Both the position numbers and the translations under genes were made by a program. The notes below the pieces were generated by a model. The model had not been told where the DNA came from, ran no database searches, and saw nothing but the letters and a program-made list of their open reading frames with translations. Shown piece by piece: positions 28,688 to 63,958 of a stretch of 64,000 nucleotides of DNA. Location of the stretch: positions 62,001 through 126,000 of IMG/VR virus record IMGVR_UViG_3300028840_001395. One strand, 5' to 3'. Position 1 is the first letter of the stretch. Every line of letters starts with the position of its first letter.

Positions 28688-29048
28688 GGGGGCGAAATGG
28701 CTTCGACTGGGGTGTTGAAGCTCAGGGCGCGTTCCGTGATTGTCGCAGGTCACGTTAAACGGCGGCACACTACAACTGCCAACGACGAGGCGGTTCTCCA
28801 GGCGGCTTAGGCCACCTCGTCCGACCGGGAACCCGTATCCCCGAGGGGTCCTGGGAGGGCGTAAGCAAAATCGAGGATAGGGTCTGCTGCTAGCTGCCCG
28901 GCTCGGCAACCTGAAACGTGCTAGGGATGCTGGTCACGAGAGTCTGCCACTGGACGCTCGGGGTCAAAAGACAAACCAGGGGCTATGAACGTAGGGCCTT
29001 GAAGTGGATTGCTTCAGGACAGGGGTTCGACTCCCCTCGCCTCCACCA
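28688..29048 (+). ncRNA. ssrA: tmRNA, tag (A)ANDEAVLQAA
   Basis: GGGGGCG...TTCGAC 5' end, G3.U70, tag ORF 28778-28810, T arm and CCA. Confidence 0.93.
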
Positions 29049-29101
29049 TTCAATCCTTGACACCTCCACACCACGCTGATACAGTGGGTGTCGGAGGTCA
29101 G

Positions 29102-37429: not shown

Positions 37430-37438
37430 GAGGAAGAG

Positions 37439-38293
37439 ATGGCCAAGCAGGAGATGAGCGCCAAGGACTTCCGCGAGGATCTCCTTCGGGTTCTCGCGGA
37501 CAAGACGGGGCTCAAGGCCAACAAGCCGGTCAAGCACGGTGACGTGTATGACTCGGTGGCGACCCTCAAGGGCGTCACCCGCGACCAGTACGGTCAGCAG
37601 GCCAACACCAACATCCTGTGGGTGGATCGCTGGATTCAGTGGGCCTTCAAGTCCCTGGTCGATGAGGGACTCGGCAAGCGGGCCGGGCGTGGCCAGTGGG
37701 CGCTGACCCCCCAGGGCGTCAAGGAAGCATCCGGGCTCGTCGCCGGGACGGCGGACGCGACCGCCAACACCGACACGGACGCCGACGAACAGGACACCCC
37801 CGCTCCGACCAAGCCGGTCGAGGCGGTCAGCCTCTCGGTCGGGCCGGGCCAGGACGAGAACTCCTACCACACCGACCCCTACATCCGGGCGCTGGCGGCG
37901 CAGGACACCTCCTGCTTCGAGGCCTACTCGGACAAGAGCACGACCTGCTCCGCCTGCCCCCTCGCGGGCGCGTGCATGAACGCGATGGCTGCCGAGCTGT
38001 CCACGCTGGCCCGCGAGCTTGCCGAGGAGGACAGGGAGGCCGAGGCCCGCGCGAAGATGGGCATCTCCGACCCGAAGCCGAAGAAGGACAAGGATCAGGG
38101 GGCCAAGTCCAGCGGGGGCGGCTCGAAGACCAAGGTGTCGCAGAGCAACGCCAACCTGATCGTCGTCCAGCAGCAGGCCATCTGCCGGGGCTGTGGCAAG
38201 ACCATCCCGAAGGGCGATGAGGGCTGGTGGGTGCGCTCGACCAACACGAGCGAGGGTGGTCTCTACCACGCGGACTGCCTGGAGGTCGAGTGA
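37439..38293 (+). CDS. Mrr_N-like winged-helix protein with zinc-binding motifs
   Basis: RWIQWAFKSL...RGQWALTPQG; CSAC, CRGC. Confidence 0.65.
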   Translation: MAKQEMSAKDFREDLLRVLADKTGLKANKPVKHGDVYDSVATLKGVTRDQYGQQANTNILWVDRWIQWAFKSLVDEGLGKRAGRGQWALTPQGVKEASGLVAGTADATANTDTDADEQDTPAPTKPVEAVSLSVGPGQDENSYHTDPYIRALAAQDTSCFEAYSDKSTTCSACPLAGACMNAMAAELSTLARELAEEDREAEARAKMGISDPKPKKDKDQGAKSSGGGSKTKVSQSNANLIVVQQQAICRGCGKTIPKGDEGWWVRSTNTSEGGLYHADCLEVE

Positions 38294-39106: not shown

Positions 39107-40513
39107 ATGTCGTTCAAGTACCAGGTCATCCGGGACGGGGACAACCGCTTCGTGCTCCCGCAAGTCGGGGAGATGAACTGCGAGGTCGTGGCCTTCCTGA
39201 CCGACGAACTCTTCGACGGAACCGACGAGAAGCTCTGGTCGCAAGCGGCGAACAGCGCCTCGTATCCGGGTGTCACCCACGTCTACCTGATGCCGGACAC
39301 CCACCTGGGCTACGGGGTGCCCATCGGCGGCGTCGTGATCACGGACGGCACGCTCATCCAGGCCGGGAGCGGCTACGACATCTCCTGCGGTGTCCTCTAC
39401 ATGAAGGCCCACATGGGAGCCATCGAGGTCACCGACCCGGAGAAGCGGCTCGCCTGGATCCGGGAGATCGAGAAGCGCGTCGCCACGGGTGTCGGCTCGC
39501 ACCAGCCGGAGTTGATGAAGTCGGCAGACCACAACGTCATTCAGTCCGCCTTCCTCAACGGGGCGGCTCCGCTCAACGTCTCCGCGACGCAGTGCGAGCG
39601 CCTGTGCATCCCGGTGGACGAGCAGTACTTCGACCCGAACCGTATCGAGCGAGCCATCACCAAGGCGGCTCCGCAGATGGGCAGCCTGGGCGGCGGGAAC
39701 CACTTCATCGAGATGCAGGTTGACCCGAGGGACTCGTCCGTCTGGCTCATGGTTCACTGCGGCTCGCGTGGGTTCGGCTGGCAGACGGCCAACCACTACT
39801 ACTACGCCGGGGCCGAGGCCCGTGGACTCGTGCCGAAGAAGCGGGAACAGTCCTGGCTCTACATGGACGAGCCGCTGGGCCGGGAGTACTGGGCGCACCA
39901 CAACGCGGCGGCGAACTACGCCATCGTCAACCGGCACGTCATCGCGGAGCGTCTGCGCGAGGCCACCCAGGAGGTGTTCAACGCCGACGCCAGCGTGTAC
40001 TACGAGATCAGTCACAACCTCATCCAAGAGGAGACCATCTTCCTGCCGGACGGATCCGTGGCCACGGGTTTCGTCCACCGCAAGGGCGCGACTCGCGCTC
40101 TGCCCCCGAAGCATCCGGAGCTGACGGGCACCGCCTGGATCGAGTCGGGGCACCCCTGCCTCATCCCCGGCTCGATGCAGGCGGGTGCGGCCATCCTGTT
40201 CGCCAAGGACTCCGCGAAGTCGGGCCAGTCGGTCAACCACGGCTCCGGGCGTCTCCTGGGTCGCGGCCAGGCCAAGCGGGAGTTCTCCGAGATGCAGGGC
40301 ATGATCGATGAGGAGATGAGCGAGGCCAAGGTCACCTGCGACGATGGCACCGAGGTCGAGGGCATCGTCCTCAACACGGACAAGACGCCGCTGGACGAGT
40401 GCGGCCACGCCTACAAGGATCTCGACACCGTTCTGGGTGTCCTCGAAGCCGAGGGCATCGCGGAGGTCAAGCACCGGATGTTCCCCGTAGCGAACATCAA
40501 GGGTCTGGACTGA
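39107..40513 (+). CDS. rtcB: RtcB-family RNA 3'-phosphate/5'-OH ligase
   Basis: MPDTHLGYGVPIG, DISCG, GSLGGGNHFIE, HCGSRG, HRKGAT, PGSM, HGSGR, YKD. Confidence 0.95.
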   Translation: MSFKYQVIRDGDNRFVLPQVGEMNCEVVAFLTDELFDGTDEKLWSQAANSASYPGVTHVYLMPDTHLGYGVPIGGVVITDGTLIQAGSGYDISCGVLYMKAHMGAIEVTDPEKRLAWIREIEKRVATGVGSHQPELMKSADHNVIQSAFLNGAAPLNVSATQCERLCIPVDEQYFDPNRIERAITKAAPQMGSLGGGNHFIEMQVDPRDSSVWLMVHCGSRGFGWQTANHYYYAGAEARGLVPKKREQSWLYMDEPLGREYWAHHNAAANYAIVNRHVIAERLREATQEVFNADASVYYEISHNLIQEETIFLPDGSVATGFVHRKGATRALPPKHPELTGTAWIESGHPCLIPGSMQAGAAILFAKDSAKSGQSVNHGSGRLLGRGQAKREFSEMQGMIDEEMSEAKVTCDDGTEVEGIVLNTDKTPLDECGHAYKDLDTVLGVLEAEGIAEVKHRMFPVANIKGLD

Positions 40514-45463: not shown

Positions 45464-46012
45464 CTACCCGGACTCCAAGGCTCCGTCCCAGTACTGCACG
45501 GTGCCGAGGTAATCCTGCCACGTCGGCGGCATCCCCTCCGTCCACGAGAGAACGGGGAAGCTGACACCGGGCAGCGACTTCGGCTTGACCGGCTTCGAGC
45601 GGAGCTTCATCCTGGCCTGCTCCGGCGTCCTGTCCTTCTTGCGCTGGTTGCACTCCATGCAGGACACGACGATGTTCTCCCAGCGAGTCCGGCCCCCTGC
45701 AGCCTGCGGGATGACGTGATCGAAGGTGAACTCCGCCATCGACACCTTGGTGCCGCAGTACTGGCAGGTGCCCTTGTCACGCAGCCAGACGTTCTTCCGG
45801 TTGAACTTGACGCCCTTGCGGAAGATGCCGGTGACCTTGTGGACGAAGCGCACGATGGACGGCATCGGGAACACCTGTGACGGCGACCGAATTGTCCGAT
45901 CCTCATACTCCTCCACCACCGCTGCGCGTCCCGAGATGACCCAGGTGATCGCCTTCTGCCAGCTTACGCGGCTGATCGGCATGTAGGTGTTGGTGAGTAC
46001 TAGCGTGTCCAT
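45464..46012 (-). CDS. HNH endonuclease (McrA-like)
   Basis: CQYCG, DHVIP, CMECNQRK. Confidence 0.9.
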   Translation of the reverse strand: MDTLVLTNTYMPISRVSWQKAITWVISGRAAVVEEYEDRTIRSPSQVFPMPSIVRFVHKVTGIFRKGVKFNRKNVWLRDKGTCQYCGTKVSMAEFTFDHVIPQAAGGRTRWENIVVSCMECNQRKKDRTPEQARMKLRSKPVKPKSLPGVSFPVLSWTEGMPPTWQDYLGTVQYWDGALESG

Positions 46013-48533: not shown

Positions 48534-48628
48534 TGGTAGCCCCGGAGGGAGTCGAACCCTCGGTGGAGCCCCTACGTCTCCGGCACGGTTTATAAGACCG
48601 CCGCTGTGACCGTTCAGCTTACGGGGCC
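48534..48628 (-). tRNA. tRNA-Ile(TAT) with long variable arm
   Basis: Loop CTTATAA, about 23-nt variable region, CCA. Confidence 0.75.
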
Positions 48629-50403: not shown

Positions 50404-50408
50404 GCGGA

Positions 50409-50674
50409 TGGTGCGGGTGGTGGGAGTCGAACCCACAAGACCAGAACGTCTCTTATCGGGACTCACGCTTCCCTGTGGGGGGATGAGGTTCCCCAACCCC
50501 TGCCATTACTGACAGCGGCCCCAACCCGGTGCTTCTGAAGCCTAGAGACCGTGCCCCGTCCGGGAACGCCACAACGCAGCTTTTTACCTTCCGGTAGCAC
50601 CCTGGCCCCTCAATCACGAGGTTTCCGGTTTCACCTTGGTTTTCCGGTTCCGTTGCCTGTTAGGTCACACCCGC
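50409..50674 (-). ncRNA. 266-nt RNA with tRNA acceptor/T arm and a large insert in place of the anticodon loop
   Basis: GCGGGTG/CACCCGC-A-CCA, GTGGG-TTCGACT-CCCAC, ACCGGAA/TTCTGGT stem. Confidence 0.6.
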
Positions 50675-51230: not shown

Positions 51231-51306
51231 TGGAGCGGACGACCAGGATCGAACTGGCGACCTCCTGCTTGGCAAGCAGGTGCTCTACCGGCTGAGCTAC
51301 GTCCGC
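51231..51306 (-). tRNA. tRNA-Gly(GCC)
   Basis: Loop TTGCCAA, U73. Confidence 0.92.
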
Positions 51307-51926
51307 ATCTTGTCCCACCCCTCGGCTGCGGACGGGCTAACCGCCACGCACCTTTTCAGGTGAGCCACTTCCTCGGATGACCACACATAACAGGTGTCCG
51401 CGTAGAGGTCATACCCGACGATGAAGTCGAAGTCTGCCTTCTGGTATCGAACCGCCTTGTTGTGGCCTTGGACACACTTGAGAGACACAGAGGGAAGACC
51501 CTTCCCCGAGGCATGTGCCCACTTGACCTGCACCTTCAAGATTCGACCTGTCTCTGGAATCTCCACTACCCAGTCGGCCTTGTCTCCATCGAAAGGCGAC
51601 CCAAAGACATTGAACCCACAGACGGTCATCCTAAACAAGACGGCTGCCTCAGCGATCTTCGCCTTCTGAAGGCGCGAGGCATTGGGGTTCATCATCCGAT
51701 AAAGAGGGGACTCTGCCCCGCGTGACTTTTTGGGGTGCCCCCCTCGTTGATTTTCCTTACGCTTGGCTGCCTGCTCACTCTTTGTCAAAGGATGGGGCTT
51801 GAGCCATCCACTCAGAGAACCTTTCGAGGCCCCTGTCCGTTGGTGGATTTCTCGCAGAGACAAGCCTTCCTCAACTCGGAGCCGAATGCACTCCGCCTTC
51901 AATTTAGGATTAGACTTTCCGCGCAA
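51297..51926 (-). CDS. HTH + PD-(D/E)xK endonuclease (group I intron-associated type)
   Basis: LSLREIHQRTGASKGSLSGW; D...LKVQVK...DFDFIVGY. Confidence 0.8.
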   Translation of the reverse strand: MRGKSNPKLKAECIRLRVEEGLSLREIHQRTGASKGSLSGWLKPHPLTKSEQAAKRKENQRGGHPKKSRGAESPLYRMMNPNASRLQKAKIAEAAVLFRMTVCGFNVFGSPFDGDKADWVVEIPETGRILKVQVKWAHASGKGLPSVSLKCVQGHNKAVRYQKADFDFIVGYDLYADTCYVWSSEEVAHLKRCVAVSPSAAEGWDKMRT

Positions 51927-51981: not shown

Positions 51982-52057
51982 TGGTGTGGATGACGGGGTA
52001 TGATCCCGCAACCCCTGCCCTGGCAAGGCAGTACTCTTCCAGTTGAGCTACATCCAC
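51982..52057 (-). tRNA. tRNA-Gly(GCC), atypical (A73, T loop ATCATAC)
   Basis: Loop TTGCCAG, CCA. Confidence 0.65.
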
Positions 52058-52061
52058 AGAT

Positions 52062-52184
52062 GGTGGGGAGAGACGGTGTTGCCGACTGTCAGTAGGGCTA
52101 CGGGAATCGAACCCGCATCTCCGGGCCTCACCCGGCGTGTTGTCCATTACACCAAGTCCTTGTCGGCGGCGTCCCGTGCCCACC
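52062..52184 (-). ncRNA. tRNA-like core with extended terminal stem (1)
   Basis: D and T arms, 5-nt anticodon loop, flanks pair GGTGGG/CCCACC and GCCGAC/GTCGGC. Confidence 0.6.
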
Positions 52185-52297
52185 GAGAACAAGATGGAGA
52201 GGGCCGTTCCAGAACTGCACCCCCAGAACCCAGGAAGGCCCGCGCCCGCCAGGGTAGGAGGACACAGCCCGACAGGCCCGTGTCCATCTGATTTACT

Positions 52298-52373
52298 TGG
52301 AGCGAGTGACCGGGATCGAACCGGCGACCTTCTGGATGGGAACCAGATGCTCTGCCAACTGAGCTACACTCGC
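52298..52373 (-). tRNA. tRNA-Gly(CCC)
   Basis: Loop TTCCCAT, U73. Confidence 0.9.
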
Positions 52374-52377
52374 AACG

Positions 52378-52506
52378 GGTCGAGGCAAGGTGTGTGTCGC
52401 GTACAGGTGAAGAAAACGGGTCTCGAACCCGCAACCTTCGGCTTGATAAGGCCGACGCTCAACCATTTGAGCTATCTCTTCTGAAACGACACCGCAGTCC
52501 TCGACC
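52378..52506 (-). ncRNA. tRNA-like core with extended terminal stem (2)
   Basis: 8-nt loop CTTATCAA, no CCA, flanks pair GGTCGAGG/CCTCGACC and GTGTCG/CGACAC. Confidence 0.65.
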
Positions 52507-52512
52507 GCGAAC

Positions 52513-52588
52513 TGGTGGAGCTGAGGGGACTCGAACCCCTGACCCTCTGGATGCCATCCAGATGCTCTCCCAACTGAGCTACAGCCCC
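52513..52588 (-). tRNA. tRNA-Ala(GGC)
   Basis: G3.U70, loop ATGGCAT. Confidence 0.92.
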
Positions 52589-52596
52589 ACATGTGC

Positions 52597-52673
52597 TGGA
52601 GGCGGAGGCGGGAATCGAACCCGCGTGGCCCGGCTCATGAGGCCGGGGCGGCAAGACCAACAGCCTCTCCGCA
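52597..52673 (-). tRNA. Atypical tRNA(CAT), 1:72 mismatch, weak D arm
   Basis: Loop CTCATGA, CCA. Confidence 0.65.
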
Positions 52674-52680
52674 CAGATGA

Positions 52681-52758
52681 TGGTAGCGGGGGCGGGATTT
52701 GAACCCGCGATCTCCAGGTTATGAGCCTAGCGGGATGACCAGACTTCCCTACCCCGCA
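52681..52758 (-). tRNA. tRNA-fMet-like (CAT)
   Basis: 1:72 mismatch, TTCAAATCC T loop, loop CTCATAA. Confidence 0.85.
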
Positions 52759-52763
52759 ACAAG

Positions 52764-52853
52764 TGGTCTCGGGGGGATGGCTGCGAACCATCCAACTCCT
52801 GCCGATGAGAGGGCCTCACCAGCCCCTGCAAGAGTCGCCTTGCTTGGCCCCGA
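52764..52853 (-). ncRNA. tRNA-like element ending in CCA
   Basis: TCGGGG/CCCCGA stem, GGATGG-TTCGCAG-CCATCC arm, bulged central hairpin. Confidence 0.45.
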
Positions 52854-52862
52854 TAGTGAATG

Positions 52863-52938
52863 TGGTTGTCCCGAGGGGACTCGAACCCCCAACCTCCCGG
52901 ATATCAGCCGGACGCTCCACCAGTTGAGCTTCGGGACA
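52863..52938 (-). tRNA. tRNA-Ile(GAT)
   Basis: Loop CTGATAT, CCA. Confidence 0.88.
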
Positions 52939-52948
52939 ATAGATGACT

Positions 52949-53025
52949 TGGTACTCCCGAGTGGAATTGAACCACCGACCCCGCGCTTATCAGGCGCGTG
53001 CTCTAAACCGCTGAGCTACGGGAGC
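52949..53025 (-). tRNA. tRNA-Ile(GAT)
   Basis: Loop CTGATAA, CCA. Confidence 0.92.
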
Positions 53026-53031
53026 GAAGAA

Positions 53032-53793
53032 CTAGGGACAGGCTGTGGCATCCTCACAGGACGGGCAGGAAGCCGCGTCACAGCCTGTGGGACAGAACTC
53101 GACCTTGTAGCCCACCGCCTTGTTGAACGTGTCCTGACAGCCGCCCTGGGGGCTTCTGCCATCCTTGCAGCCACCCTGCGTGGGGTTGGCGTAGGCGTCC
53201 GGGCACTTCTCATCGCCGCACCAGAGCGGGCGGCAGTCGTGATTCGCATGGTCAACCGCACACGTCAGGTCCGGTGCGAACTTGACCGGGACCGAGAAGC
53301 CCAGCTCCAGGTCGAGGTTGTAGGAGTCGAACTTGCCGTAGGTGTCACCCTCGTTGCCCGCGCTGAACTCGATGCGGGTGCCCTCGGTGCAGTTCGGGGC
53401 GTCCTTGTGCGCCATGACCTCGAAGCCTTCGGTCAGGCAATCTGGCTTCCAGGGGGTGCAGGAACCGGGCGCGTAGTTGGCGTTGACGATGTGCCAGAAG
53501 GTGCTCTTGCCAGCGGCCAGGAGGGGCAGCTTCGTGCAGTCACACTGCGGAGCGCCCTTCGTCCCGTCGCCATTGCAGCCGACCTGGTAGGCCACGCCCA
53601 CGTCGTAGGTGCAGGAGTTGTGGAACTCGATGCACCGCTCACCTGCGGGACAGGCTTTGACCCAGTACTTCGTGTAGTCGGTGCAGGCGTTGGTGCAGAC
53701 CGGCGCAGCCGCAGCTTCCTTCTCGGGAGCAGCAGGCGGGTCGTCAGTGCATCCGACCAAGAGAAGTGCGAGAACCAAGGCCCAGGATTTCAT
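53032..53793 (-). CDS. Thaumatin-like Cys-rich lipoprotein
   Basis: Lipobox LLVGC; TRIEF...DSYNLDLELGFSVPVKFAP...CPDAY...YKVEFCP. Confidence 0.75.
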   Translation of the reverse strand: MKSWALVLALLLVGCTDDPPAAPEKEAAAAPVCTNACTDYTKYWVKACPAGERCIEFHNSCTYDVGVAYQVGCNGDGTKGAPQCDCTKLPLLAAGKSTFWHIVNANYAPGSCTPWKPDCLTEGFEVMAHKDAPNCTEGTRIEFSAGNEGDTYGKFDSYNLDLELGFSVPVKFAPDLTCAVDHANHDCRPLWCGDEKCPDAYANPTQGGCKDGRSPQGGCQDTFNKAVGYKVEFCPTGCDAASCPSCEDATACP

Positions 53794-53830
53794 GGGTCAC
53801 CTCCGTTACAGAGCCGGAGGTATAGGCTCT

Positions 53831-54160
53831 CTAGGGCTGGTTGAAAATCTCCGCGCGCCCTTCGGGGGTCCGAATAAGACGCAGGAGGTCTTTCCAAGTG
53901 AATCCGACACTTGGCCAATCCAGTTTCTTGTTCTCCTTGTCGGACAACGCCTTCACGCGCATAAGCCCGGTGGTGAAGAACTCACGGGTCTCCACATCGA
54001 AAAACCCGAAGCGGAATCCCACATGATTGTCAACCGCCTCAGTGGGGTGACCTGCTGCTTGCCGTTCTCGGAGAATTTGAAGTAGCTCATAAAGAGTGGG
54101 CACAAACTCCTCTACCCTGGTTCCATTCTCATCGTGTCCTATCACTCGCGTCAGAGCCAT
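53831..54160 (-). CDS. Hypothetical protein
   Basis: SD GGAGGT. Confidence 0.65.
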   Translation of the reverse strand: MALTRVIGHDENGTRVEEFVPTLYELLQILRERQAAGHPTEAVDNHVGFRFGFFDVETREFFTTGLMRVKALSDKENKKLDWPSVGFTWKDLLRLIRTPEGRAEIFNQP

Positions 54161-54172
54161 CCAGATTACCTC

Positions 54173-54679
54173 CTAGAGGTCGTGCGCCCGCTTGACGATC
54201 TCGCTCGTGGAGGCAAGCTCATCGATGTCCGGGATGATGACGACCTCGACGGCCTTCTTCCCACTGCGGGGGAGCTTGCCCGTGGCCACCTCGTCCTCAC
54301 GTCCGGCGAACTCGTCGTTGCGAAACACCTTACCGCCCCGGACACCGAGAAGCTCCGTGGCGACGTTGGTGAAGTCCCAGAGGCCGTCTTGGATGTAGGC
54401 GAAGGTGACGAGCTTGTTCGCGTTCAGCAGCATCACCCGCTGGAACTCGCTCGTGAGGGGTCTGGTCGGCCCCTTGACCTTCCTGACGGCCTTGTCGCTG
54501 TCCACACCGACGATGAGGATGTCGCACTCCCGGCGACATCGGAGCAGGTAGCGCAGGTGGAAGTCGTGGAACAGGTCGAAGGTTCCCGAGGTCAGCCCGA
54601 CCGTCTTGTCCTTGGGCTGATGCTCAATCCAGAGCTTCGCCGCTTCCAGCGACGTGGACTCGTAGGGGTTGATGATCAC
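54173..54679 (-). CDS. Cytidylyl/adenylyltransferase-family protein (RfaE/TagD-like)
   Basis: GTFDLFHDFH, IVGVDSD..VRKVKG..RP, STSEI. Confidence 0.85.
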   Translation of the reverse strand: MIINPYESTSLEAAKLWIEHQPKDKTVGLTSGTFDLFHDFHLRYLLRCRRECDILIVGVDSDKAVRKVKGPTRPLTSEFQRVMLLNANKLVTFAYIQDGLWDFTNVATELLGVRGGKVFRNDEFAGREDEVATGKLPRSGKKAVEVVIIPDIDELASTSEIVKRAHDL

Positions 54680-54728
54680 CCTTGCACCTCCACCTAGACT
54701 ACTCTCTCGGTGGGGTGGATAAGCCTAG

Positions 54729-54804
54729 TGGAGCGGGCGACGAGAATCGAACTCGCAACCCTCGGCTTGGAAGGCCGATGCTCTAGCCGTTGAGCTACGC
54801 CCGC
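54729..54804 (-). tRNA. tRNA-Gly(TCC)
   Basis: Loop CTTCCAA, U73. Confidence 0.92.
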
Positions 54805-54811
54805 TTGGAAG

Positions 54812-55216
54812 CTATCCCTTGAACTCGTAATCAGAGGCCCATCGAATGTTCTTCTTCTGACCCTGCCGGGCTGCCTCCAGGCGCAGCCGCGCACATTTGA
54901 CGCCAACTTCATCCACAGGAACGAGATAGACCTTATCGAGTCCTGGGGCATAGACTGCGAAGATGTCAGCCTCGCCCCGGTAAGTCCGGGTTTTCTTCGT
55001 ATTCCAGTTGTTTGAACAGGTGGGAAACTGGATGTATCCAGGAAAGACCTGAGCAGTCTTGCACTGGACTCGGGTGAACTTCCCTCCCTCGTCCAACACC
55101 ATGTCGTATCTCTGGTTGTCCCCGAAGGGGGTGAGGACAACCTTCCCAGCCCGGAGAAAGGCGGCAAGAATCTGCCCCTCTGACCTTTCCCCAACTGCTT
55201 TGGGATTCATGTCCAT
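54812..55216 (-). CDS. PD-(D/E)xK endonuclease (group I intron-associated type)
   Basis: GERSE...PFGDNQRYDMV...RVQCKT...ADIFAVY. Confidence 0.85.
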   Translation of the reverse strand: MDMNPKAVGERSEGQILAAFLRAGKVVLTPFGDNQRYDMVLDEGGKFTRVQCKTAQVFPGYIQFPTCSNNWNTKKTRTYRGEADIFAVYAPGLDKVYLVPVDEVGVKCARLRLEAARQGQKKNIRWASDYEFKG

Positions 55217-55263
55217 GTGAACCTCCAAAGAGAAGGTATCACATTCCCAAGGTTATATCTAGG

Positions 55264-55341
55264 TGGTGAGCCGGGCGGGACTCGAACCCGCGACCGCCTG
55301 ATTAAAAGTCAGATGCTCTAATCCAACTGAGCTACCGGCCC
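55264..55341 (-). tRNA. tRNA-Lys(TTT)
   Basis: Loop CTTTTAA, CCA. Confidence 0.92.
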
Positions 55342-55342
55342 G

Positions 55343-55418
55343 TGGTGGGCCTGACAGGAATCGAACCTGCGTCTCTCCGCTTAAAAGGCGGCAGCAACCC
55401 AACTTTTGCTACAGACCC
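55343..55418 (-). tRNA. tRNA-Lys(TTT)
   Basis: Loop CTTTTAA, CCA. Confidence 0.85.
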
Positions 55419-55490
55419 ACGGAGAAGTCACCGCGAGCCCTGCGTTTCAGCCGAGTCATGATTGACCTCCTTGGGTCTGTGGAGTGTATC

Positions 55491-55566
55491 TGGTGCCCCC
55501 AGCAGGAGTCGAACCTGCGGCCATCCGCTTAGGAGGCGGGTGCTCTATCCTCTGAGCTATGGAGGC
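55491..55566 (-). tRNA. tRNA-Arg(CCT)
   Basis: Loop CTCCTAA, CCA. Confidence 0.9.
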
Positions 55567-55573
55567 AGGGAGT

Positions 55574-56701
55574 CTAGGGCGGAGGATTTGGGTCAGAGAA
55601 TACGGTGAAATATCCAAGACCAGCTAGCACGAGTTCACCCTTGGTGATGTATGCCTTGATGAGCGCGTTGGACGTCGAATCTATGTTCAAGGAAAGCGCC
55701 CCACCGAGGGTCAACGTCCCAGGGAGGGCTGGTGGCTCCCGGCCCACGAATGACGATGCGGTCATGAAACGGGAAGACCCATCCTCGTTGATGGTGACAT
55801 CCCCGCCCAGCGACGACGTAATTATCTGTGCCATCTCTCCGATGGAAATGAAGTCCTTTGCGTAGATGATAGCGTTGTTCAAAACCACCCCACCAGCGGC
55901 GGGGGCGTCGATGCTGTTGATCAACATCCGGGAGTCAAAGACCGACAGTGTTGACCAACCCGGCAGATTCCGGTTTGCCTCGTAGGGGGCGGCACAGATG
56001 ATGTCGGATGTGTAGTTGGAAAGGAACCCGCCCGTGGCGATGTAGATCTCATACGGGGTGTCAACGTGAGGGAGAAGGATATCCCCCTGGAGTCCCGCAT
56101 TCACAAGGTTCAGGATGACCTTTCCCAACGGGGCAGTGTCCCCGACGATGCTCCCGAAAACCACGGACTCTGCCAAGGTGAGCTTGCGCCCGTAGTCGGC
56201 CCCAGGAGCCGGAGGCCACGCGGGTTCTCCCGTGAATGTGATATTCCCGGCAATGAACATGCCGCTGAATGAGGTTCCTCCAAGGTGCGGCCCCGGAGTG
56301 CCGTAGCTCCTGATGTTCAAGGTGGACTGGTTGATAGGCGGAGCCGAGCCGTTGGGCACGTTGAACGTGATATCCCCTCCAGGCCCCCCGATGCTGCTTG
56401 GGTCTCCGAGAAACACCGTACCCAGCGTGTAGATGTTGAATACACCCGCTGTCGAAATGGTGATGGACTCGTCGTAGATCCCCGGATAGACCCAGAGAGT
56501 CTGAATCCAGGTCGTAGGATCACCCGCGTCATACACGGGGAGCGCAGCTATGGCCTCCGTGATGGTTCGGAATGGGGCGACCCAGGAGCCATTCGCTTCG
56601 GGCGTCCCTGCGGGAGCCGGGCCAGGGGCCACGACCTTCATCTGCTCGTTGGGCGCTCCCGTGATGAGGTCTGCAAGCTCTGCCGGGATGTTGTAGGACA
56701 T
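55574..56701 (-). CDS. Putative beta-helix (pectin-lyase-like) protein, paralog of 56711-58033
   Basis: NGSWVAPFRTITEAI...VYPGIYDE. Confidence 0.6.
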   Translation of the reverse strand: MSYNIPAELADLITGAPNEQMKVVAPGPAPAGTPEANGSWVAPFRTITEAIAALPVYDAGDPTTWIQTLWVYPGIYDESITISTAGVFNIYTLGTVFLGDPSSIGGPGGDITFNVPNGSAPPINQSTLNIRSYGTPGPHLGGTSFSGMFIAGNITFTGEPAWPPAPGADYGRKLTLAESVVFGSIVGDTAPLGKVILNLVNAGLQGDILLPHVDTPYEIYIATGGFLSNYTSDIICAAPYEANRNLPGWSTLSVFDSRMLINSIDAPAAGGVVLNNAIIYAKDFISIGEMAQIITSSLGGDVTINEDGSSRFMTASSFVGREPPALPGTLTLGGALSLNIDSTSNALIKAYITKGELVLAGLGYFTVFSDPNPPP

Positions 56702-56710
56702 CGTGACCCC

Positions 56711-58033
56711 CTACGGGATGACCGCGTCGTTGAGGAGATTCGTCCCTGCGGGGAACGCCGACCCCGCGAGCTTCGTCATCGAGTTCGTGGCCAAGTCCAC
56801 GTAGAAGTTACCAGGAACCGTGAACGTGACCACCCCTGTCACCCGGCAGTCCAGGAAGTATGCCTCTGCGGAGGTGGCGTCCAGCGTATCGTTGAACCTG
56901 CATCCGTGGACAAGCCCCACACTCCCGAAGTCCACACCACCACTGAACAGGCAACCCTTGACATCGGGGTTCCCGGAGTCGTTCTCGAAGTTGGCCTGGA
57001 AGATACAGTCCTCGATCAAGGTGATGTCATGCACATCGACGTTCCCGTTGAACTCGCAACGGCGCATCTTGTCGGCATCGTCCGCCACGGTAACCGAGAA
57101 CCCGAACACGCTGTCGGTGAAGTGGGCGTCCTGGAGAGTCACACTGCCCCCCAAGAGAGAATCCTGATAGACTCCCTCACGGGCGGTCACGGCACCCTCG
57201 AATCTGCTCTGCTCTATGGCGATCATGTCGGACGCCTCTGGTGCCCAAACGGAAGCCGTCTGCATGGGAAGGCCATTCGGGGTGAATGTCCCCTGCCTCA
57301 CGTCCGTTCGCTCGAAGTTGAGTTGACGCTCACCCCCGACCTCCGACCCGCCGACAAAGACCCCATCACCAATTTCGCTATTCTCGAAGTACCATTTGTA
57401 GGTTACCTCGCGTCCGAACTGGATGGCATCACATCGACTCTGCACAAGAGCCATGCCGAGCTGCCCAGCCCACTCGGTCGGCTGGCCTGCGTCCTTGCCC
57501 ACGATGTTTCCGCCGATGTTGGTATTCCGGAACCAGCAGAAGCGGTCAACGGGGTCTCCATCGATGATTACATCCCCAGAGATATCGAAGAGCGTGATCT
57601 CTGTGTTCCCTACCTGTGGCATCGGGAGAACAATGAGGGAGGCCGGAACGTAATTCCCAGGAGGAGCCCCCGTGATCTGGGTGGGGGCGTCCTTGTCCCA
57701 GGTGACCGACTTGGGATCACCCTGCTCCCCGATACGGGCAGCACCCACCGTGTAGAAGAGCATGATCTTCGACTTGGTGATTGTGACATCCTCGTTGTAG
57801 ATGCCCGACATGATCCAGATCTGCTCAAACCAGGTGTTCTGGTCAGCCCCATCCACGGGAGCCATTGCATCTACGGCAGCCTGGATTGTCCGATAGGGAT
57901 TGGCCCATGTCCCGTCAGCAGGCTCCCCGGCCCCAGCGCCTCCGGCGGGGTCGTTGCTCACGACCTTGATGGCAGAGGGGAGCGCCCCGCTCTGGAGCAT
58001 ATCGAGAAGTGACTGCGGGATGTTGTAGGACAT
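56711..58033 (-). CDS. Putative beta-helix (pectin-lyase-like) protein
   Basis: DGTWANPYRTIQAAV...IMSGIYNE; C.F.G.V repeats. Confidence 0.65.
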   Translation of the reverse strand: MSYNIPQSLLDMLQSGALPSAIKVVSNDPAGGAGAGEPADGTWANPYRTIQAAVDAMAPVDGADQNTWFEQIWIMSGIYNEDVTITKSKIMLFYTVGAARIGEQGDPKSVTWDKDAPTQITGAPPGNYVPASLIVLPMPQVGNTEITLFDISGDVIIDGDPVDRFCWFRNTNIGGNIVGKDAGQPTEWAGQLGMALVQSRCDAIQFGREVTYKWYFENSEIGDGVFVGGSEVGGERQLNFERTDVRQGTFTPNGLPMQTASVWAPEASDMIAIEQSRFEGAVTAREGVYQDSLLGGSVTLQDAHFTDSVFGFSVTVADDADKMRRCEFNGNVDVHDITLIEDCIFQANFENDSGNPDVKGCLFSGGVDFGSVGLVHGCRFNDTLDATSAEAYFLDCRVTGVVTFTVPGNFYVDLATNSMTKLAGSAFPAGTNLLNDAVIP

Positions 58034-58077
58034 GGACGCCTCCTTGGCCCTACACTGTACCCCGGATAGGCAGATTA

Positions 58078-58154
58078 TGGCACCCCCGGAGGGACTCGAA
58101 CCCCCACCGTCCTGATTAGAAGTCAGGCATCCTCTCCAATTAGACCACGGAGGC
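58078..58154 (-). tRNA. tRNA-Arg(TCT)
   Basis: Loop CTTCTAA, CCA. Confidence 0.88.
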
Positions 58155-58211
58155 ACAGGGGCCATCCAGGGTCGCGGGTGAACGCGCCTCGCTGGACGGC
58201 AGGACGGAACT

Positions 58212-58288
58212 TGGTGGGCCTGACTGGGCTTGAACCAGCGAACCTCCGCCGTGTCGAGGCGGCGCTCTCCCAACTGAGCTACAGGCCC
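58212..58288 (-). tRNA. tRNA-Val(GAC), C at position 33
   Basis: Loop TCGACAC, CCA. Confidence 0.85.
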
Positions 58289-58295
58289 ATGATTT

Positions 58296-59102
58296 TTAGG
58301 AATTGATGACTTCTCCGACCGCCCTGACGACTTTGTTCAGGTCACAGGCGTAGAGGCCAGCACAGGACAGACACCCAACTTCGAGGACTCTCCACTCACC
58401 GCTCTCGGTCTGGCAGGTGTCCAAGACCCACATCGGGTCAGGACTGAAATCCGTCTTGTCCAAGAACTCACGGGCAATGTGGAACGCCTCATTGCCCGGC
58501 TCCACGACCTCGTGCTTGAGGGTGCTCTTGACCTTGTAGAGACTCCCTGTGACGACCTCCCGGCCCTTCACGATGAACCGGAACTCACGGGCGATGTTCG
58601 TGGCCGGGGCCACGACAATCAGCGTGTCCGGTGGGATGTCGCTGTATCGCTCGATGAACTCGATGTCCTGCCCCAGCGTCTTGCGGCACATCACGATGCC
58701 CGTGAAGGTCTTGAGCCCACTGCTGGGCCGGACGAAGAAACACTCATGTTCCCCGCGCCCAAACCTCTCGAAGAGATGGGCTGCGTCATCCCGGAGTTGC
58801 CGGTAGGGAATCATGGTGCATTCGTCGTTGAGCAGCAGTCCCTTGAAGGCCGGGTAGTAGGACGAGCACTCGTAGGCTTCTACCGTGTGAAACACATTGC
58901 AGGTGGGCGAGTCCTTCATGACCCGCAGCGAGAACTCCAGGCTACCAAAGAGGAAGTCCTGGGGTCCGAAGCGGCTGAAGTCTCCTCCACCGAAGGGGAT
59001 GTAGTCCACGATCTCGTAGGTCATCCCCGCCCTGGTGATAGCGGCTTCGAGCCCCTGTTGGTTCTCCTCGAAGGTGTGGTTTTCCAAGATCCAGTTCAAC
59101 AT
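58296..59102 (-). CDS. ATP-grasp domain protein (R2K/DUF4343-like)
   Basis: FVRPSSGLKTFTG, EFRFIV, VLD...VLEVG..SCAGLY. Confidence 0.8.
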   Translation of the reverse strand: MLNWILENHTFEENQQGLEAAITRAGMTYEIVDYIPFGGGDFSRFGPQDFLFGSLEFSLRVMKDSPTCNVFHTVEAYECSSYYPAFKGLLLNDECTMIPYRQLRDDAAHLFERFGRGEHECFFVRPSSGLKTFTGIVMCRKTLGQDIEFIERYSDIPPDTLIVVAPATNIAREFRFIVKGREVVTGSLYKVKSTLKHEVVEPGNEAFHIAREFLDKTDFSPDPMWVLDTCQTESGEWRVLEVGCLSCAGLYACDLNKVVRAVGEVINS

Positions 59103-59554
59103 GGGAGGCCCATTTCTTGTAGAATCTTGACCCGAAGGTCGCCTCGCTCGATAGCCGACTTCCGCCGATGGCATTTTGCACAGCGGACCTCGCATTTCGC
59201 AAGCTCCGCTTCGACTCGGTGCCACGCAGGTAGCCGATGGTAGATGGTTGACAGACCCATGACCTTCTTACCTCGCACATGGTCGAAATCAAGGACGAGG
59301 GGGTCTGTCTCTCCACAGTCCACACACGGATGAGCGAGAAGATACGCCACGATGCGGCGCGTGTACAACTCCCTTCGGGCAGCGTTGTTCTTTCCGACGT
59401 TCTTCCGATGGGATGTCTTGTTCTTCTTGTACCAGGACTTGCGGTACTCCGCCTGGCACCGTTTGCACATGGACTGGTAGCCGTCCTTCTTGCTCTTGTT
59501 GGTGTTGAACTCCTTGAGAGGAAGGGAACGCCCACATTTTCCACAAGTCTTCAT
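59096..59554 (-). CDS. HNH endonuclease
   Basis: CGKC...CKRC; CVDCGETDPLVLDFDH...CAKCH. Confidence 0.85.
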   Translation of the reverse strand: MKTCGKCGRSLPLKEFNTNKSKKDGYQSMCKRCQAEYRKSWYKKNKTSHRKNVGKNNAARRELYTRRIVAYLLAHPCVDCGETDPLVLDFDHVRGKKVMGLSTIYHRLPAWHRVEAELAKCEVRCAKCHRRKSAIERGDLRVKILQEMGLPC

Positions 59555-59606
59555 ACGGGGAGTGTACCAAGGGCGGCTCCTAAAAGCAATCACCCTTTCA
59601 AATTCA

Positions 59607-59682
59607 TGGTGGGCCGAGAAGGATTTGAACCTTCAACCTTCAGGGTAAGAGCCTGCTGCACTATCCGTTGTGCTACCGACCC
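59607..59682 (-). tRNA. tRNA-Lys(CTT)
   Basis: Loop CTCTTAC, CCA. Confidence 0.9.
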
Positions 59683-59695
59683 ATGAATGAAAATG

Positions 59696-59771
59696 TGGTA
59701 GGCCCGGAGGGAGTCGAACCCTCAACTTCCCGGTTAAGAGCCGGGTACTCTGCCAGTTGAGCTACGGACCC
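59696..59771 (-). tRNA. tRNA-Lys(CTT)
   Basis: Loop CTCTTAA, CCA. Confidence 0.92.
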
Positions 59772-59799
59772 ACATGCTCGTGAAGGACGCCGTTTTAGA

Positions 59800-59929
59800 C
59801 AGGATTCGGGAGAGAGGCCCGGTCATCGGTGGGGGTCGAACCCACGACCTCCGGGTTGAAAAAGCCGTCAAGCCGTCCCGACGCTCTGCCGACTGAGCTA
59901 CGACTACGTGGACTTCATCCCGTCCCCTG
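59800..59929 (-). ncRNA. tRNA-like core with extended terminal stem (3)
   Basis: Canonical D and T arms, 21-nt anticodon loop, no CCA, flanks pair CAGG/CCTG and CGGGA/TCCCG. Confidence 0.6.
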
Positions 59930-62358: not shown

Positions 62359-62934
62359 CTAGTGAGATGTCCCGTAGAGCTTGTGCTCCAGAATGTAGTC
62401 CATCACCTTGGGCGGAACCATCTTCCGAGCATGACCCAGACCACCTGGGCCGCTCGCCAGGCTCATCCTGATGTCCGTGCTGCTGATGTCAGGGAGGACG
62501 AAGGGCATCTGGGACTCCGCACCATCGGGCCGGGGCATCACGAAGAATTCGACCAACCCGGCCAAGTCCTGCCAACGATGCCAGGAGTGCATCACGCCCT
62601 CATTGTCCGAGCCGATGATCAGGAACAGGTCGAAGTCCTCCTTCGGGTACTCGACCCGCATCTTCTCCATGAGATCCACCGTGTAGCGGATACGCAGGAG
62701 TCGCTCCATCGAGGACACATGGACGTCCGGCATACCACTGAACGCCCGTCCACACATGAAAAGCCGATGGTCGAAGTCGATGAGGTGGGAGTCCTTGTCG
62801 AAGGCGTGGTGCCAGCAGGGGTGGACGTAGATGCGGTCAAACTGGCCCATCACCTGGGCGTAGGCCAGGCCCATGACATGAGCGATGTGGGGTGGGTTGA
62901 ACCCGCCGCCGAAGAACGCGATACGCTGCTTCAT
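62359..62934 (-). CDS. nadD: Nicotinate/nicotinamide-nucleotide adenylyltransferase
   Basis: FGGGFNPPHIAH, YTVD, IIGSDN...WHRW, ISSTDIR. Confidence 0.9.
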   Translation of the reverse strand: MKQRIAFFGGGFNPPHIAHVMGLAYAQVMGQFDRIYVHPCWHHAFDKDSHLIDFDHRLFMCGRAFSGMPDVHVSSMERLLRIRYTVDLMEKMRVEYPKEDFDLFLIIGSDNEGVMHSWHRWQDLAGLVEFFVMPRPDGAESQMPFVLPDISSTDIRMSLASGPGGLGHARKMVPPKVMDYILEHKLYGTSH

Positions 62935-63517: not shown

Positions 63518-63958
63518 TCACATCAACTTCAAGTGTCCCGTGATCTCATCGATGGCCTTGGGGTGTGCCGGACCGATGGCCACACAGGTCTTGGTAGGTA
63601 CCCCGTGGAACTCCGTCGCCCCCGAATCAGTGATGACTGCCGTGGGGAATCCGAGTTTCTGGGACTCCTCCGCCAGGGCGAGAAGCTCCTCCTCGTCCTT
63701 GCAGCCCACGACGACCTTGGTGAACAGCCCCTTGATCCAGCCCTCCAACCCCGCCGTGTCCAGCATGACGATGAGACAGGCCATCTCCTTGGTCGTCCTG
63801 CCGGGATTCTGAGGGTCGGCATCGACCTCGACCATCCCGAACTCTCCCCGGTCAAGCAGCACCTTCATCGAGGCATGGGCCACCTGGGCGGCAATCTTGC
63901 CCTTCCGCATCTTGAGATCCTTGCGGACGACGATCACCTGCTTCATCTCATCGGCCAT
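63518..63958 (-). CDS. pth2: Peptidyl-tRNA hydrolase 2 (Pth2)
   Basis: KQVIVVRKDLKMRKGKIAAQVAHA, KVVV, DSGATEF, AIGP...ID.ITG.LKL. Confidence 0.93.
   Translation of the reverse strand: MADEMKQVIVVRKDLKMRKGKIAAQVAHASMKVLLDRGEFGMVEVDADPQNPGRTTKEMACLIVMLDTAGLEGWIKGLFTKVVVGCKDEEELLALAEESQKLGFPTAVITDSGATEFHGVPTKTCVAIGPAHPKAIDEITGHLKLM

What the first reader, a model, noticed from the sequence alone, without database searches (positions are those of the whole stretch)
52062..59929. Three tRNA mimics with extended acceptor stems and broken anticodon loops
Seen at 52062-52184, 52378-52506 and 59800-59929: intact D and T arms, anticodon loops of 5, 8 and 21 nt, and no CCA at the normal position. The 5' and 3' flanks pair into a further 20-25 nt bulged helix. 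The sequences differ but the architecture is shared, which argues against simple decay. Established: bacterial Y RNAs combine a terminal stem with a tRNA-like domain and are often near rtcB/Ro60. Inference: decoys for tRNA-targeting defences, or a Y-RNA-like family.
Basis: partly seen in the sequence, partly recalled or inferred. Interest (0 to 1): 0.7.

Follow-up and report, generated by a model that had tools for sequence, protein, structure and literature searches.

The report
Phage Y-RNA-like tRNA mimics
Three tRNA-shaped genes in a huge phage's tRNA array are not decoding tRNAs: one certainly and one probably belong to an undescribed phage RNA family that puts a tRNA-like body on a conserved two-helix handle and is encoded beside a hidden Ro60-like protein.

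Summary
On the minus strand at 52062-52184 (E1), 52378-52506 (E2) and 59800-59929 (E3) lie tRNA-like cores with intact D/T arms, anticodon loops of 5, 8 and 21 nt and no encoded CCA. Their flanks pair far better than those of the genome's other tRNAs. A fourth element, E4, lies outside the window. It sits about 230 nt upstream of a 535-aa protein that the TROVE HMM misses but whose model superposes on Ro60 (Z 17). That gene is always followed by ARPP-1.

In 23 of 24 loci that carry this protein, the upstream region holds 1-3 RNAs of one family. Each has helices P1 and P2, motifs GRGRACKG and UWCAG, and an inserted body: tRNA-like, circularly permuted tRNA-like (YrlA order), or none. Both helices covary strongly.

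A model built without window sequences scores E2 at 99 bits and E4 at 90 bits. E3 has the motif at the right spacing, but its score does not discriminate. E1 shares only the build.

Odd loop length is not a family trait; anticodon hypervariability is. The best reading is Y-RNA-type scaffold RNAs for a divergent phage Ro60-like/ARPP-1 particle. Binding and function remain untested.

The parts
52378..52506 (-). E2: whole unit, a member of the new scaffold RNA family (P1, motif, P2, tRNA-like body, P2', P1')
   Evidence: Model R3, whose seed holds no window sequence, scores it 99.2 bits, E 9e-22, full length 1-126, at exactly these coordinates. MFE z is -3.8.
52499..52506 (-). E2 P1 5' strand (GGUCGAGG). 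The motif GAGGACUG spans 52495-52502.
   Evidence: It pairs with 52378-52385. The motif starts 21 nt before tRNA position +1.
52487..52493 (-). E2 P2 5' strand (GGUGUCG), followed by the junction UUUCAG, whose G is tRNA position +1
   Evidence: It pairs with 52392-52399.
52406..52481 (-). E2 tRNA-like body: 7-bp acceptor, D arm, anticodon arm with the 8-nt loop CUUAUCAA, T arm; discriminator A followed by CCU
   Evidence: In the microbial-mat strain one U is lost, giving the 7-nt loop CUAUCAA.
52378..52399 (-). E2 3' strands: P2' (52392-52399), linker, P1' (52378-52385)
   Evidence: No change in the variant strain.
59800..59929 (-). E3: whole unit, a probable divergent member. P1 is 59925-59929 with 59800-59804. 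An extra helix is 59918-59922 with 59807-59811. P2 is 59910-59916 with 59814-59820.
   Evidence: GGGGAC starts 20 nt before +1, as in E2 and E4 and in no canonical tRNA. R3 aligns it full length at 35.7 bits, which does not discriminate. Changes in the variant strain keep the pairs of the inner helices.
59821..59907 (-). E3 tRNA-like body with a 21-nt anticodon loop (23 nt in the variant strain); discriminator C followed by GGG
52062..52184 (-). E1: whole unit, same build but family membership not shown. Its three helices are 52179-52184 with 52062-52067, 52170-52175 with 52070-52075, and 52162-52167 with 52081-52086.
   Evidence: Strongest flank duplex of the genome, -29.6 kcal/mol. One change in 123 nt in the variant strain, located in the loop. 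R3 gives only 23.3 bits.
52092..52161 (-). E1 tRNA-like body: acceptor with two mismatches, D stem GUGU/ACAC, 5-nt anticodon loop, canonical T arm
39107..40513 (+). RtcB RNA ligase gene: context only, 12 kb away
   Evidence: Pfam RtcB, E 8.5e-89

Best explanation
E2 (and E4, genome 409700-409831, outside the window) are non-coding scaffold RNAs of the Y-RNA kind.

Build (shown). Two terminal helices, P1 and P2, are formed by the 5' and 3' ends. They carry conserved unpaired or junction motifs: GRGRAC(U/G)G and U(U/A)CAG. This handle holds a tRNA-shaped body whose acceptor end is buried, so the RNA has no CCA end to be charged and does not decode.

Partners (inferred). By position and by analogy with Ro60 and Y RNA, the handle is the binding site of a divergent phage Ro60-like ring protein (TROVE-like ring plus vWA/MIDAS). 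The gene for that protein follows such RNAs in many phages. Its vWA face is predicted to hold ARPP-1.

Role of the body (inferred). The tRNA-like body is the exchangeable effector module. It could recruit a tRNA-binding enzyme, or act as a tRNA look-alike, for tRNA surveillance, repair or protection during infection. In related units the body is permuted, or absent.

E3 and E1. E3 is most likely a diverged copy of the same design. E1 is a look-alike whose membership is open.

Status of the steps. Shown: RNA family, covariation, synteny, Ro60 fold. Inferred: transcription as a stable RNA, binding to the Ro60-like protein, and any role in tRNA metabolism.
For: 1. Flank helices are beyond chance and are specific to the four CCA-less, odd-loop elements.

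2. The elements have no close paralogue among the canonical tRNAs (best identity 0.67-0.71, against a median of 0.76 for canonical tRNAs). Elbow nucleotides are intact.

3. E4 lies about 230 nt upstream of, and on the same strand as, the start of P0001. The AF2 model of P0001 has pLDDT 85 and pTM 0.79. Its top 13 Foldseek hits in the PDB are all Ro60 (E 2e-6 to 4e-4). VIA-align gives Z 15-17.2 over about 410 residues spanning ring and vWA, whereas vWA-only hits reach Z 11 at most. The MIDAS motif DASAS is present.

4. Synteny. The Ro60-like gene is followed by ARPP-1 in every context examined. A tRNA-like unit lies upstream on the same strand. In a Minicystis genome a canonical TROVE gene is also present.

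5. RNA family.
- 32 full-length hits of 66-117 bits in 23 of 24 loci; ordinary tRNAs score 55 or less.
- All 12 pairs of P1 and P2 show changes on both sides; 93% of cells are paired, against 34-47% when the partner is slid; 0 of 500 shuffles reach the observed values.
- G-U pairs on this strand point to structure at the RNA level.

6. Independent model R3: E2 99.2 bits and E4 90 bits, the only strong hits in the 436-kb genome.

7. The same handle carries permuted bodies in the YrlA order and body-less mini units. Two mini units sit between E4 and the gene.

8. In close relatives the handle is 100% conserved while the body drifts, with compensatory changes. In a variant strain the flanks of E1 and E2 have 0 changes in 106 nt, against 7 events in the 113-nt spacer (p 0.014).

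9. GRGRAC at -20/-21 occurs only in E2, E3 and E4.

10. Predicted complex of the Ro60-like protein with ARPP-1:
- ipSAE 0.66, best of 3 controls 0.00.
- The mark was reached by 58 of 80 solved complexes and 2 of 110 mismatched pairs.
- Contacts agree at 86% or more; partner pLDDT 87.
- The interface is the MIDAS face.

11. Precedent: phage Ro60 proteins with upstream Y-RNA-like RNAs (PMC4201824, PMC12135203).
Against: - No expression or binding data. No RNA run holding this sequence was found.
- E1-E3 lie about 295 kb from the Ro60-like gene, whereas known Y RNAs lie within 4 kb of Ro60.
- The TROVE HMM, PDB sequence searches and hhalign do not link the protein to Ro60. The link is by predicted fold only.
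- The Rfam Y RNA models score far below threshold.
- The known Ro-binding motifs (GGUCCGA, GNCGAAN0-1G) are not present as such.
- E1 (23 bits) and E3 (36 bits) are not separated from ordinary tRNAs by the model.
- Alignment A6 was fitted to the model, which inflates the pair counts somewhat.
- Related huge phages with similar tRNA-like units in a different handle have neither TROVE nor this protein.
Confidence: 0.6

Rival explanations
1. They are real decoding tRNAs made from unusual precursors. P1 and P2 would be a processing or regulatory stem. RNase P and a 3' nuclease would free the body, the CCA-adding enzyme would complete it, and odd loops would give unusual decoding, such as the four-base anticodon UAUC in E2.
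For: - Most family members have 7-nt loops with U33 and A37/A38 and good tRNA scores.
- E2 and E4 have A-C-C after the acceptor stem.
- M. smegmatis YrlA is cut by RNase P and receives CCA (PMC4201824).
Against: - The anticodon triplet is the most variable part. Two of three positions differ between orthologues that are 90-93% identical elsewhere. The triplets include AUC, ACA, AGU and UUA.
- Loop lengths are 5, 6, 8 and 21-23 nt and change between strains.
- The same handle carries permuted and body-less inserts.
- The body of L077 has degenerate D and T loops while its handle is unchanged.
- Every canonical tRNA of this genome encodes CCA.
Confidence: 0.1
2. They are stand-alone decoys or sponges for host tRNA-targeting defence nucleases or tRNA-binding toxins, with the helices serving only to stabilise the RNA. 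The Ro60-like protein would not be involved for the copies in the tRNA array.
For: - E1-E3 are embedded in the tRNA array, far from the protein gene.
- The anticodon is hypervariable, as expected in an arms race.
- RtcB and other tRNA-related genes are nearby.
- Phage tRNAs are known counter-measures to anticodon nucleases (PMC9503650).
Against: - In close relatives the handle, not the body, is the most conserved part, and it carries sequence motifs in unpaired positions, which suggests a specific binder.
- Body-less units keep the handle.
- Loops of 5 or 21 nt are poor mimics of an anticodon-loop substrate.
Confidence: 0.15
3. E1 and E3, or all three, are decaying tRNA pseudogenes whose flank pairing is fortuitous.
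For: - E1 has two acceptor mismatches and the lowest tRNA score.
- E3's overall substitution rate in the variant strain, about 10%, equals that of the neighbouring spacer, and its outer helix is weakened.
- Whole-unit folds of E1 and E3 are not better than shuffles.
- The family model does not separate them from tRNAs.
Against: - Flank duplexes rank 1 and 9 of 70.
- E1 has 1 change in 123 nt while the adjacent tRNA-Gly has about 20 and the spacer 7.
- E3's changes in stems keep pairing in 3 of 3 cases, and the T-loop changes fall on variable positions.
- The motif sits at exact spacing in E3.
- There is no parental paralogue.
Confidence: 0.08
4. The inverted repeats act at the DNA level, as mobile-element ends, attachment sites or terminators, rather than as RNA helices.
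For: Homing-type nuclease genes (PD-(D/E)XK, HNH) are scattered in the array.
Against: - Each unit has different repeat sequences.
- The helices contain bulges and G-U pairs that would be mismatches on the other strand.
- The motifs are strand-specific, and units always share the strand of the downstream gene.
- No T-run follows the outer helices.
- The terminator scan is at chance level.
Confidence: 0.02

Closest known systems
YrlA (Rfam RF02553), bacterial and mycobacteriophage Y RNA with a tRNA-like domain, partner of Rsr/Ro60 (Chen et al. 2014, PMC4201824)
   Same: [quoted passage not shown]
- Encoded upstream of a Ro60-fold protein on the same strand, often together with a second, smaller RNA (YrlB); compare the body-less units here.
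- Present in phages.
- Permuted siblings of the new family have the YrlA order: T arm, closed acceptor hairpin, D arm.
   Different: - E1-E4 are not permuted: the stem continues from the acceptor end and a full anticodon arm is present.
- The motifs are GRGRACKG and UWCAG, not GNCGAAN0-1G.
- The CM score is 24 bits against a threshold of 69, and that hit bridges two genes.
- The partner protein is not recognised by the TROVE HMM and is paired with ARPP-1.
- E1-E3 lie far from the protein gene.
Deinococcus radiodurans Yrn1 (Rfam RF01053)
   Same: The terminal bulged stem lies on the acceptor side, and an anticodon-like arm has a 5-bp stem and a loop that is not 7 nt (PMC4201824). E2 aligns over the full model length.
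   Different: The score is 24.7 bits against a threshold of 80. Yrn1 lacks a clear D arm and variable region, whereas the bodies here are nearly complete tRNAs.
Thermus phage phiLo Ro60 with Yrl1/Yrl2 (PMC12135203)
   Same: A phage-encoded protein with the Ro60 fold and Y-RNA-like genes just upstream. The phiLo protein is among the structural matches (9kop/9l5y, Z 15-16).
   Different: The phiLo RNAs are stem-bulge-stem with a CGAA motif and have no tRNA body. The phiLo protein is a recognisable TROVE protein. No ARPP-1 partner is described.
Canonical phage tRNA genes (Rfam RF00005)
   Same: The cores pass the tRNA gathering score and lie within a tRNA array.
   Different: There is no encoded CCA in a genome where all the others have it. 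The anticodon loops have the wrong length or hypervariable triplets. The ends are locked in 16-20 bp of extra helix.

Membership tests
Functional tRNA | Cloverleaf that passes the tRNA covariance model | tested here: met
   RF00005 scores are 41.7 (E1), 58.3 (E2) and 43.9 (E3) bits, against a threshold of 29.
Functional tRNA | 7-nt anticodon loop and a free acceptor end with CCA (encoded in all other tRNAs of this genome) | tested here: not met
   Loops are 5, 8 and 21 nt. There is no CCA, and both ends are paired in the flank helices.
YrlA (RF02553) | Score at or above the curated threshold of 69 bits | tested here: not met
   The best hit is 24.4 bits. It runs from E2's T arm into the next tRNA's D arm, which is the known dimer artefact.
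YrlA (RF02553) | Permuted order: terminal stem in place of the anticodon stem, closed acceptor hairpin between the T and D arms | tested here: not met
   E1-E4 have the normal tRNA order. Siblings in other loci, such as L064:1775-1925, do have the permuted order.
YrlA / bacterial Y RNA | GNCGAAN0-1G (or GGUCCGA) motif near the 5' end | tested here: not met
   Only look-alikes are present: E1 GCCGAC, E2 GGUCGAGG. The family motif is GRGRACKG.
YrlA / bacterial Y RNA | Encoded within about 4 kb of a Ro60 orthologue on the same strand | tested here: inconclusive
   E4 meets this with a Ro60-fold protein about 230 nt downstream. E1-E3 lie about 295 kb away.
Y RNA (functional definition) | Bound by Ro60 in vivo | not testable with these tools
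   No RNA runs or binding data are available.
Deinococcus_Y_RNA (RF01053) | Score at or above the curated threshold of 80 bits | tested here: not met
   E2 scores 24.7 bits, E 0.05, over the full model length.
   E2 scores 99.2 bits and E4 90.0 bits; the seed held no window sequence.
   E3 scores 35.7 bits but has GGGGAC at -20 and P2 in register. E1 scores 23.3 bits, has GGGAC at -14 and has no UWCAG junction.
Ro60/TROVE protein (for the partner P0001) | Match to Pfam TROVE PF05731 | tested here: not met
   No hit in six frames of the genome or in the protein itself.
Ro60/TROVE protein (for the partner P0001) | Helical-repeat ring followed by a vWA domain with MIDAS | tested here: met
   The AF2 model has pLDDT 85. 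Ro60 chains give Z 15-17.2 over 398-413 residues. MIDAS DxSxS is present. This rests on a predicted, not a solved, structure.

The most novel reading that the evidence does not exclude
The P1/P2 handle is a general docking cassette for a new Ro60-like/ARPP-1 particle. Phages load it with interchangeable baits: normal-order tRNA bodies, circularly permuted tRNA bodies, or nothing. The hypervariable anticodons would mean the particle displays a changing panel of tRNA look-alikes. These could capture or neutralise host anticodon nucleases, or aim an ARPP-1 ribose/ADP-ribose-directed activity at damaged tRNAs. This would be an RNA-guided tRNA protection or repair machine that differs from the known Ro60-Y RNA-PNPase complex.
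Probability: 0.25. Interest if true: 0.88.

Novelty: new variant of a known kind. Interest (0 to 1): 0.74.

Why it matters
Ro60 and Y RNAs are conserved from bacteria to humans, yet what the tRNA-like module of bacterial Y RNAs does is still open. Four results bear on that question.

1. There is a large, unannotated protein family with the Ro60 fold that standard domain models miss. The search found 396 or more homologues, many on phage contigs and one in a bacterial genome.
2. A new RNA family is tied to it. The same handle carries normal, permuted or no tRNA body, which is a natural domain-swap experiment separating the protein-binding module from the effector module.
3. There is a constant partner, ARPP-1, predicted to dock on the vWA MIDAS face. 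The role of that face in Ro60 is unknown.
4. Copies are embedded in phage tRNA arrays. Automatic annotation will call them tRNAs with undetermined or wrong anticodons, which inflates counts of phage tRNAs and 'suppressor' tRNAs.

Together these make the function of tRNA mimicry by Y RNAs testable in a compact phage system.

Tried and rejected
- TROVE HMM. No hit in the own genome or in 17 RtcB-related huge phages. This would have wrongly ended the Ro60 lead.
- Relatives through the neighbouring 253-aa protein. None found.
- Relatives through RtcB. This gave 20 huge-phage loci, but none has orthologues of E1-E3 or the Ro60-like gene. Instead they carry a different handle family; see the items noticed in passing.
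- Rfam Deinococcus_Y_RNA and YrlA on those genomes. Only noise and tRNA-dimer artefacts.
- First covariance model (R1, from MAFFT alignment A4). It lost P1 and P2 because the 3' strands were misaligned, so it was discarded.
- Exact 20-mer of E1's D arm against IMG/VR. No match.
- Sequence-level link of the protein to Ro60. phmmer and hmmsearch against the PDB found nothing. hhalign against a TROVE fragment aligned only the junction into the vWA/MIDAS stretch, E 0.02.
- Expression. No RNA run holds the region.
- Promoter and terminator scan. At chance level.
- Bulge-helix-bulge splicing motifs in the flanks. Considered and rejected on inspection: the bulges are not 3 nt on opposite strands across a 4-bp helix.


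Full report
SETTING. The window is bases 62001-126000 of a complete 435,804-bp virus record with direct terminal repeats and 62% G+C, that is, a huge phage. It holds 66 tRNA-like genes and a tmRNA. RtcB lies at 39107-40513.

OBSERVATION. The three elements lie on the minus strand.
- ARAGORN and Rfam tRNA find cores at 52092-52161 (E1, 41.7 bits), 52406-52481 (E2, 58.3 bits) and 59821-59907 (E3, 43.9 bits).
- The anticodon loops have 5, 8 and 21 nt.
- U8, A14, G18G19, the T loop and a co-varying 15:48 pair are intact.
- A whole-genome scan found a fourth element, E4, at genome 409728-409801 (+), with a 6-nt loop.
- These four are the tRNA-like genes without an encoded CCA; about 64 canonical tRNAs have one.
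- Their flanks pair exceptionally well: -29.6, -28.5, -28.3 and -23.4 kcal/mol against a median of -13.5, giving ranks 1, 2, 3 and 9 of 70.
- Empirical p values against 4,694 mismatched flank pairs are 0.002-0.027, and Mann-Whitney gives p = 0.0007.
- The outer helices end 4-6 nt from the next tRNA.
- None has a close paralogue among the canonical tRNAs.

NATURAL VARIANTS. Public metagenome contigs carry the same phage (two runs, identical sequence) and a diverged strain from a microbial mat.
- E1 has one change in 123 nt, in the loop.
- E2 has two changes. One removes a U, so the loop becomes 7 nt (CUAUCAA).
- The flank strands of E1 and E2 have no change in 106 nt. The 113-nt spacer between them has 7 events (Fisher p = 0.014), and the adjacent tRNA-Gly has about 20.
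- E3 changes as fast as its surroundings. Its three substitutions inside stems all keep pairing. Its loop grows from 21 to 23 nt. Its outermost helix loses two pairs while the next helix gains one.

THE Ro60 LEAD. The TROVE HMM finds nothing in the genome. However, the gene that follows E4 encodes a protein with a helical N-terminal part and a C-terminal vWA domain with the MIDAS motif DASAS.
- The protein has 396 or more unannotated homologues of about 535 aa.
- An AlphaFold model built from 37 of them has pLDDT 84.8 and pTM 0.79.
- The top 13 Foldseek matches in the PDB are all Ro60: human, Xenopus, D. radiodurans Rsr and Thermus phage phiLo (E 2e-6 to 4e-4).
- VIA-align gives Z 15-17.2 over 398-413 residues covering ring and vWA. 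vWA-only matches reach Z 11 at most.
- Sequence methods do not see the relationship.
- In every context examined, ARPP-1 (PF20208) follows the gene. In a Minicystis genome, the pair sits inside a tRNA array next to a canonical TROVE gene.
- A complex prediction supports binding of ARPP-1 to the vWA/MIDAS face. The ipSAE is 0.66 and the best of 3 controls is 0.00. The mark was reached by 58 of 80 solved complexes and 2 of 110 mismatched pairs. Contacts agree at 86% or more, and the partner pLDDT is 87.

THE RNA FAMILY. Twenty-four IMG/VR loci with the protein were fetched. Nearly all have a tRNA-like unit just upstream on the same strand.
- These units share with E2 and E4 an almost identical 5' flank: CGAGRACUG, then a helix, then UUCAG.
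- A first model (R2) found 32 full-length matches of 66-117 bits in 23 of 24 loci. Ordinary tRNAs scored 55 bits or less and mostly matched only the core.
- On the resulting alignment of 32 sequences, none from the window, all 5 pairs of P1 and all 7 pairs of P2 show changes on both sides.
- 93% of cells are paired, against 34-47% with slid partners, and 0 of 500 shuffles reach the observed values.
- The alignment was fitted to the model, which favours the structure. RNAalifold on a plain MAFFT alignment had already found both helices with compensatory changes.
- Model R3, built from that alignment, scores E2 at 99.2 bits (E 9e-22) at exactly 52378-52506 and E4 at 90 bits. These are the only strong hits in the genome.
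- E3 aligns full length at 35.7 bits and E1 at 23.3 bits, which is not above ordinary tRNAs.
- E3 carries GGGGAC starting 20 nt before position +1. E2 has the motif at -21 and E4 at -20, and none of the canonical tRNAs has it there. The genome-wide frequency of the motif is 0.0018 per position. E3's P2 is also in register.
- E1 has GGGAC at -14 and no UWCAG junction.

MODULARITY. The same handle and motifs enclose several kinds of insert.
- Circularly permuted tRNA bodies in the YrlA order (T arm, closed acceptor hairpin, D arm, anticodon arm), and other permutations.
- Body-less mini units.
- In this genome, two mini units lie between E4 and the protein's real start at M32.
- In two close relatives (protein 93% and 81% identical), the handle strands are 100% conserved while the body drifts. 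The loops are 6, 7 and 7 nt with different triplets. One body has degenerate D and T loops. Acceptor pair 6-67 reads C.A, U-A and G-C. The mini units show compensatory changes.
- Across the family, the anticodon triplet columns are the most variable (1.7-2.0 bits). Two of three positions differ between orthologues that are 90-93% identical elsewhere.
So the handle is the constrained, probably protein-binding, module, and odd loop length is incidental.

INTERPRETATION. This is the logic of Y RNAs: a terminal stem that binds Ro60 plus a variable module. YrlA and Yrn1 are tRNA mimics, and Ro60 with Y-RNA-like genes is known in phages (PMC4201824; PMC12135203; PMC7824862). The present RNAs nevertheless fail the Rfam thresholds and the published motif, and they have the other topology. 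The protein fails the TROVE model. The ARPP-1 partnership is not among the ARPP contexts described (PMC9503650). I therefore file this as a new variant of the Ro60/Y RNA kind.
- Shown: family, covariation, synteny, fold.
- Inferred: stable expression, binding of the handle by the Ro60-like protein, and a role in tRNA surveillance, repair or protection.
- The rivals are real tRNAs from odd precursors, protein-independent decoys, pseudogenes (for E1 and E3) and DNA-level repeats. They are weighed in their own sections.

Noticed in passing
Outside the window: genome 409700-411670 (= L029:5700-7670), then L029:7681-8673: A cluster of E4 plus two body-less handle units, followed by the Ro60-like gene (real start M32 with a GGAGG ribosome-binding site) and ARPP-1. 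A cytidine/dCMP deaminase-like gene lies upstream on the other strand, as it does in several related contigs.
   Followed up: yes
L029:8787-8860 and 8876-8949 (genome 412787-412950, +): Two tandem tRNA-Pro-like genes, 83% alike, have an enlarged anticodon loop (CUCUUGGGA between stems CCUGG/CCGGG). The first has CCA and the second does not. They lie just downstream of ARPP-1. An odd-loop tRNA sits at the same place in L046 (6806-6881). They may be +1 frameshift-type tRNAs or further mimics.
   Followed up: partly
G001 (about 278.9-287.8 kb) and G002 (about 442.5-443.6 kb), RtcB-related huge phages; for example G001part 62727-62895, 63577-63733, 71409-71546: This is a second, different handle family: leader GACAUCC and trailer GGAUGUC, a 4-bp inner helix, and the motif UACAAGCA. 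It encloses permuted tRNA bodies (T arm, acceptor 3' strand, ACCA, hairpin, acceptor 5' strand, D arm, anticodon arm) and non-permuted ones. These genomes have neither TROVE nor the Ro60-like family.
   Followed up: partly
window 50404-50560 (-): An orphan T arm is followed by an acceptor-like 3' strand and ACCA. Before it lies a long structured stretch with no matching 5' acceptor strand. A similar piece occurs in G001. No Rfam family matches it.
   Followed up: partly
window 51982-52057 (-): In the microbial-mat strain, tRNA-Gly(GCC) carries about 20 substitutions and an insertion, while the adjacent E1 is almost unchanged. This suggests gene replacement or fast turnover of canonical tRNAs in the array.
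   Followed up: no
window 59866-59883 (-), inside E3's 21-nt loop: The loop contains a direct repeat (ACGGCUU / GACGGCUUU). It can also form a small hairpin followed by a run of U (terminator-like in the simple scan, which was at chance level overall). The U run and the loop are longer in the variant strain.
   Followed up: no
genome 241943-242033 (-), outside the window: A tRNA with anticodon CUA (amber-reading) and a long extra arm scores 55 bits. Similar CUA tRNAs occur in G001 and G002.
   Followed up: no
L049 (Minicystis sp. genome contig, 1358259-1367863): A bacterial tRNA-array island holds 35 tRNA genes in 9.6 kb. It contains a canonical TROVE+vWA_Ro60 gene, the Ro60-like gene, ARPP-1 and an HNH nuclease. 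It is probably a prophage or mobile island.
   Followed up: partly
window 36200-38293 (+): Just upstream of RtcB lie a gene with a weak AAA_5 (MoxR/dynein-type) match and a gene with an Mrr_N domain. Homing-type nucleases (PD-(D/E)XK at 51297-51926, HNH at 45464-46012, DUF559 at 29009-29743) are scattered through the tRNA arrays.
   Followed up: no
window 48534-48628 (-): tRNA-Ile(UAU) is 95 nt long, unusually long for a class I tRNA. It was not examined.
   Followed up: no
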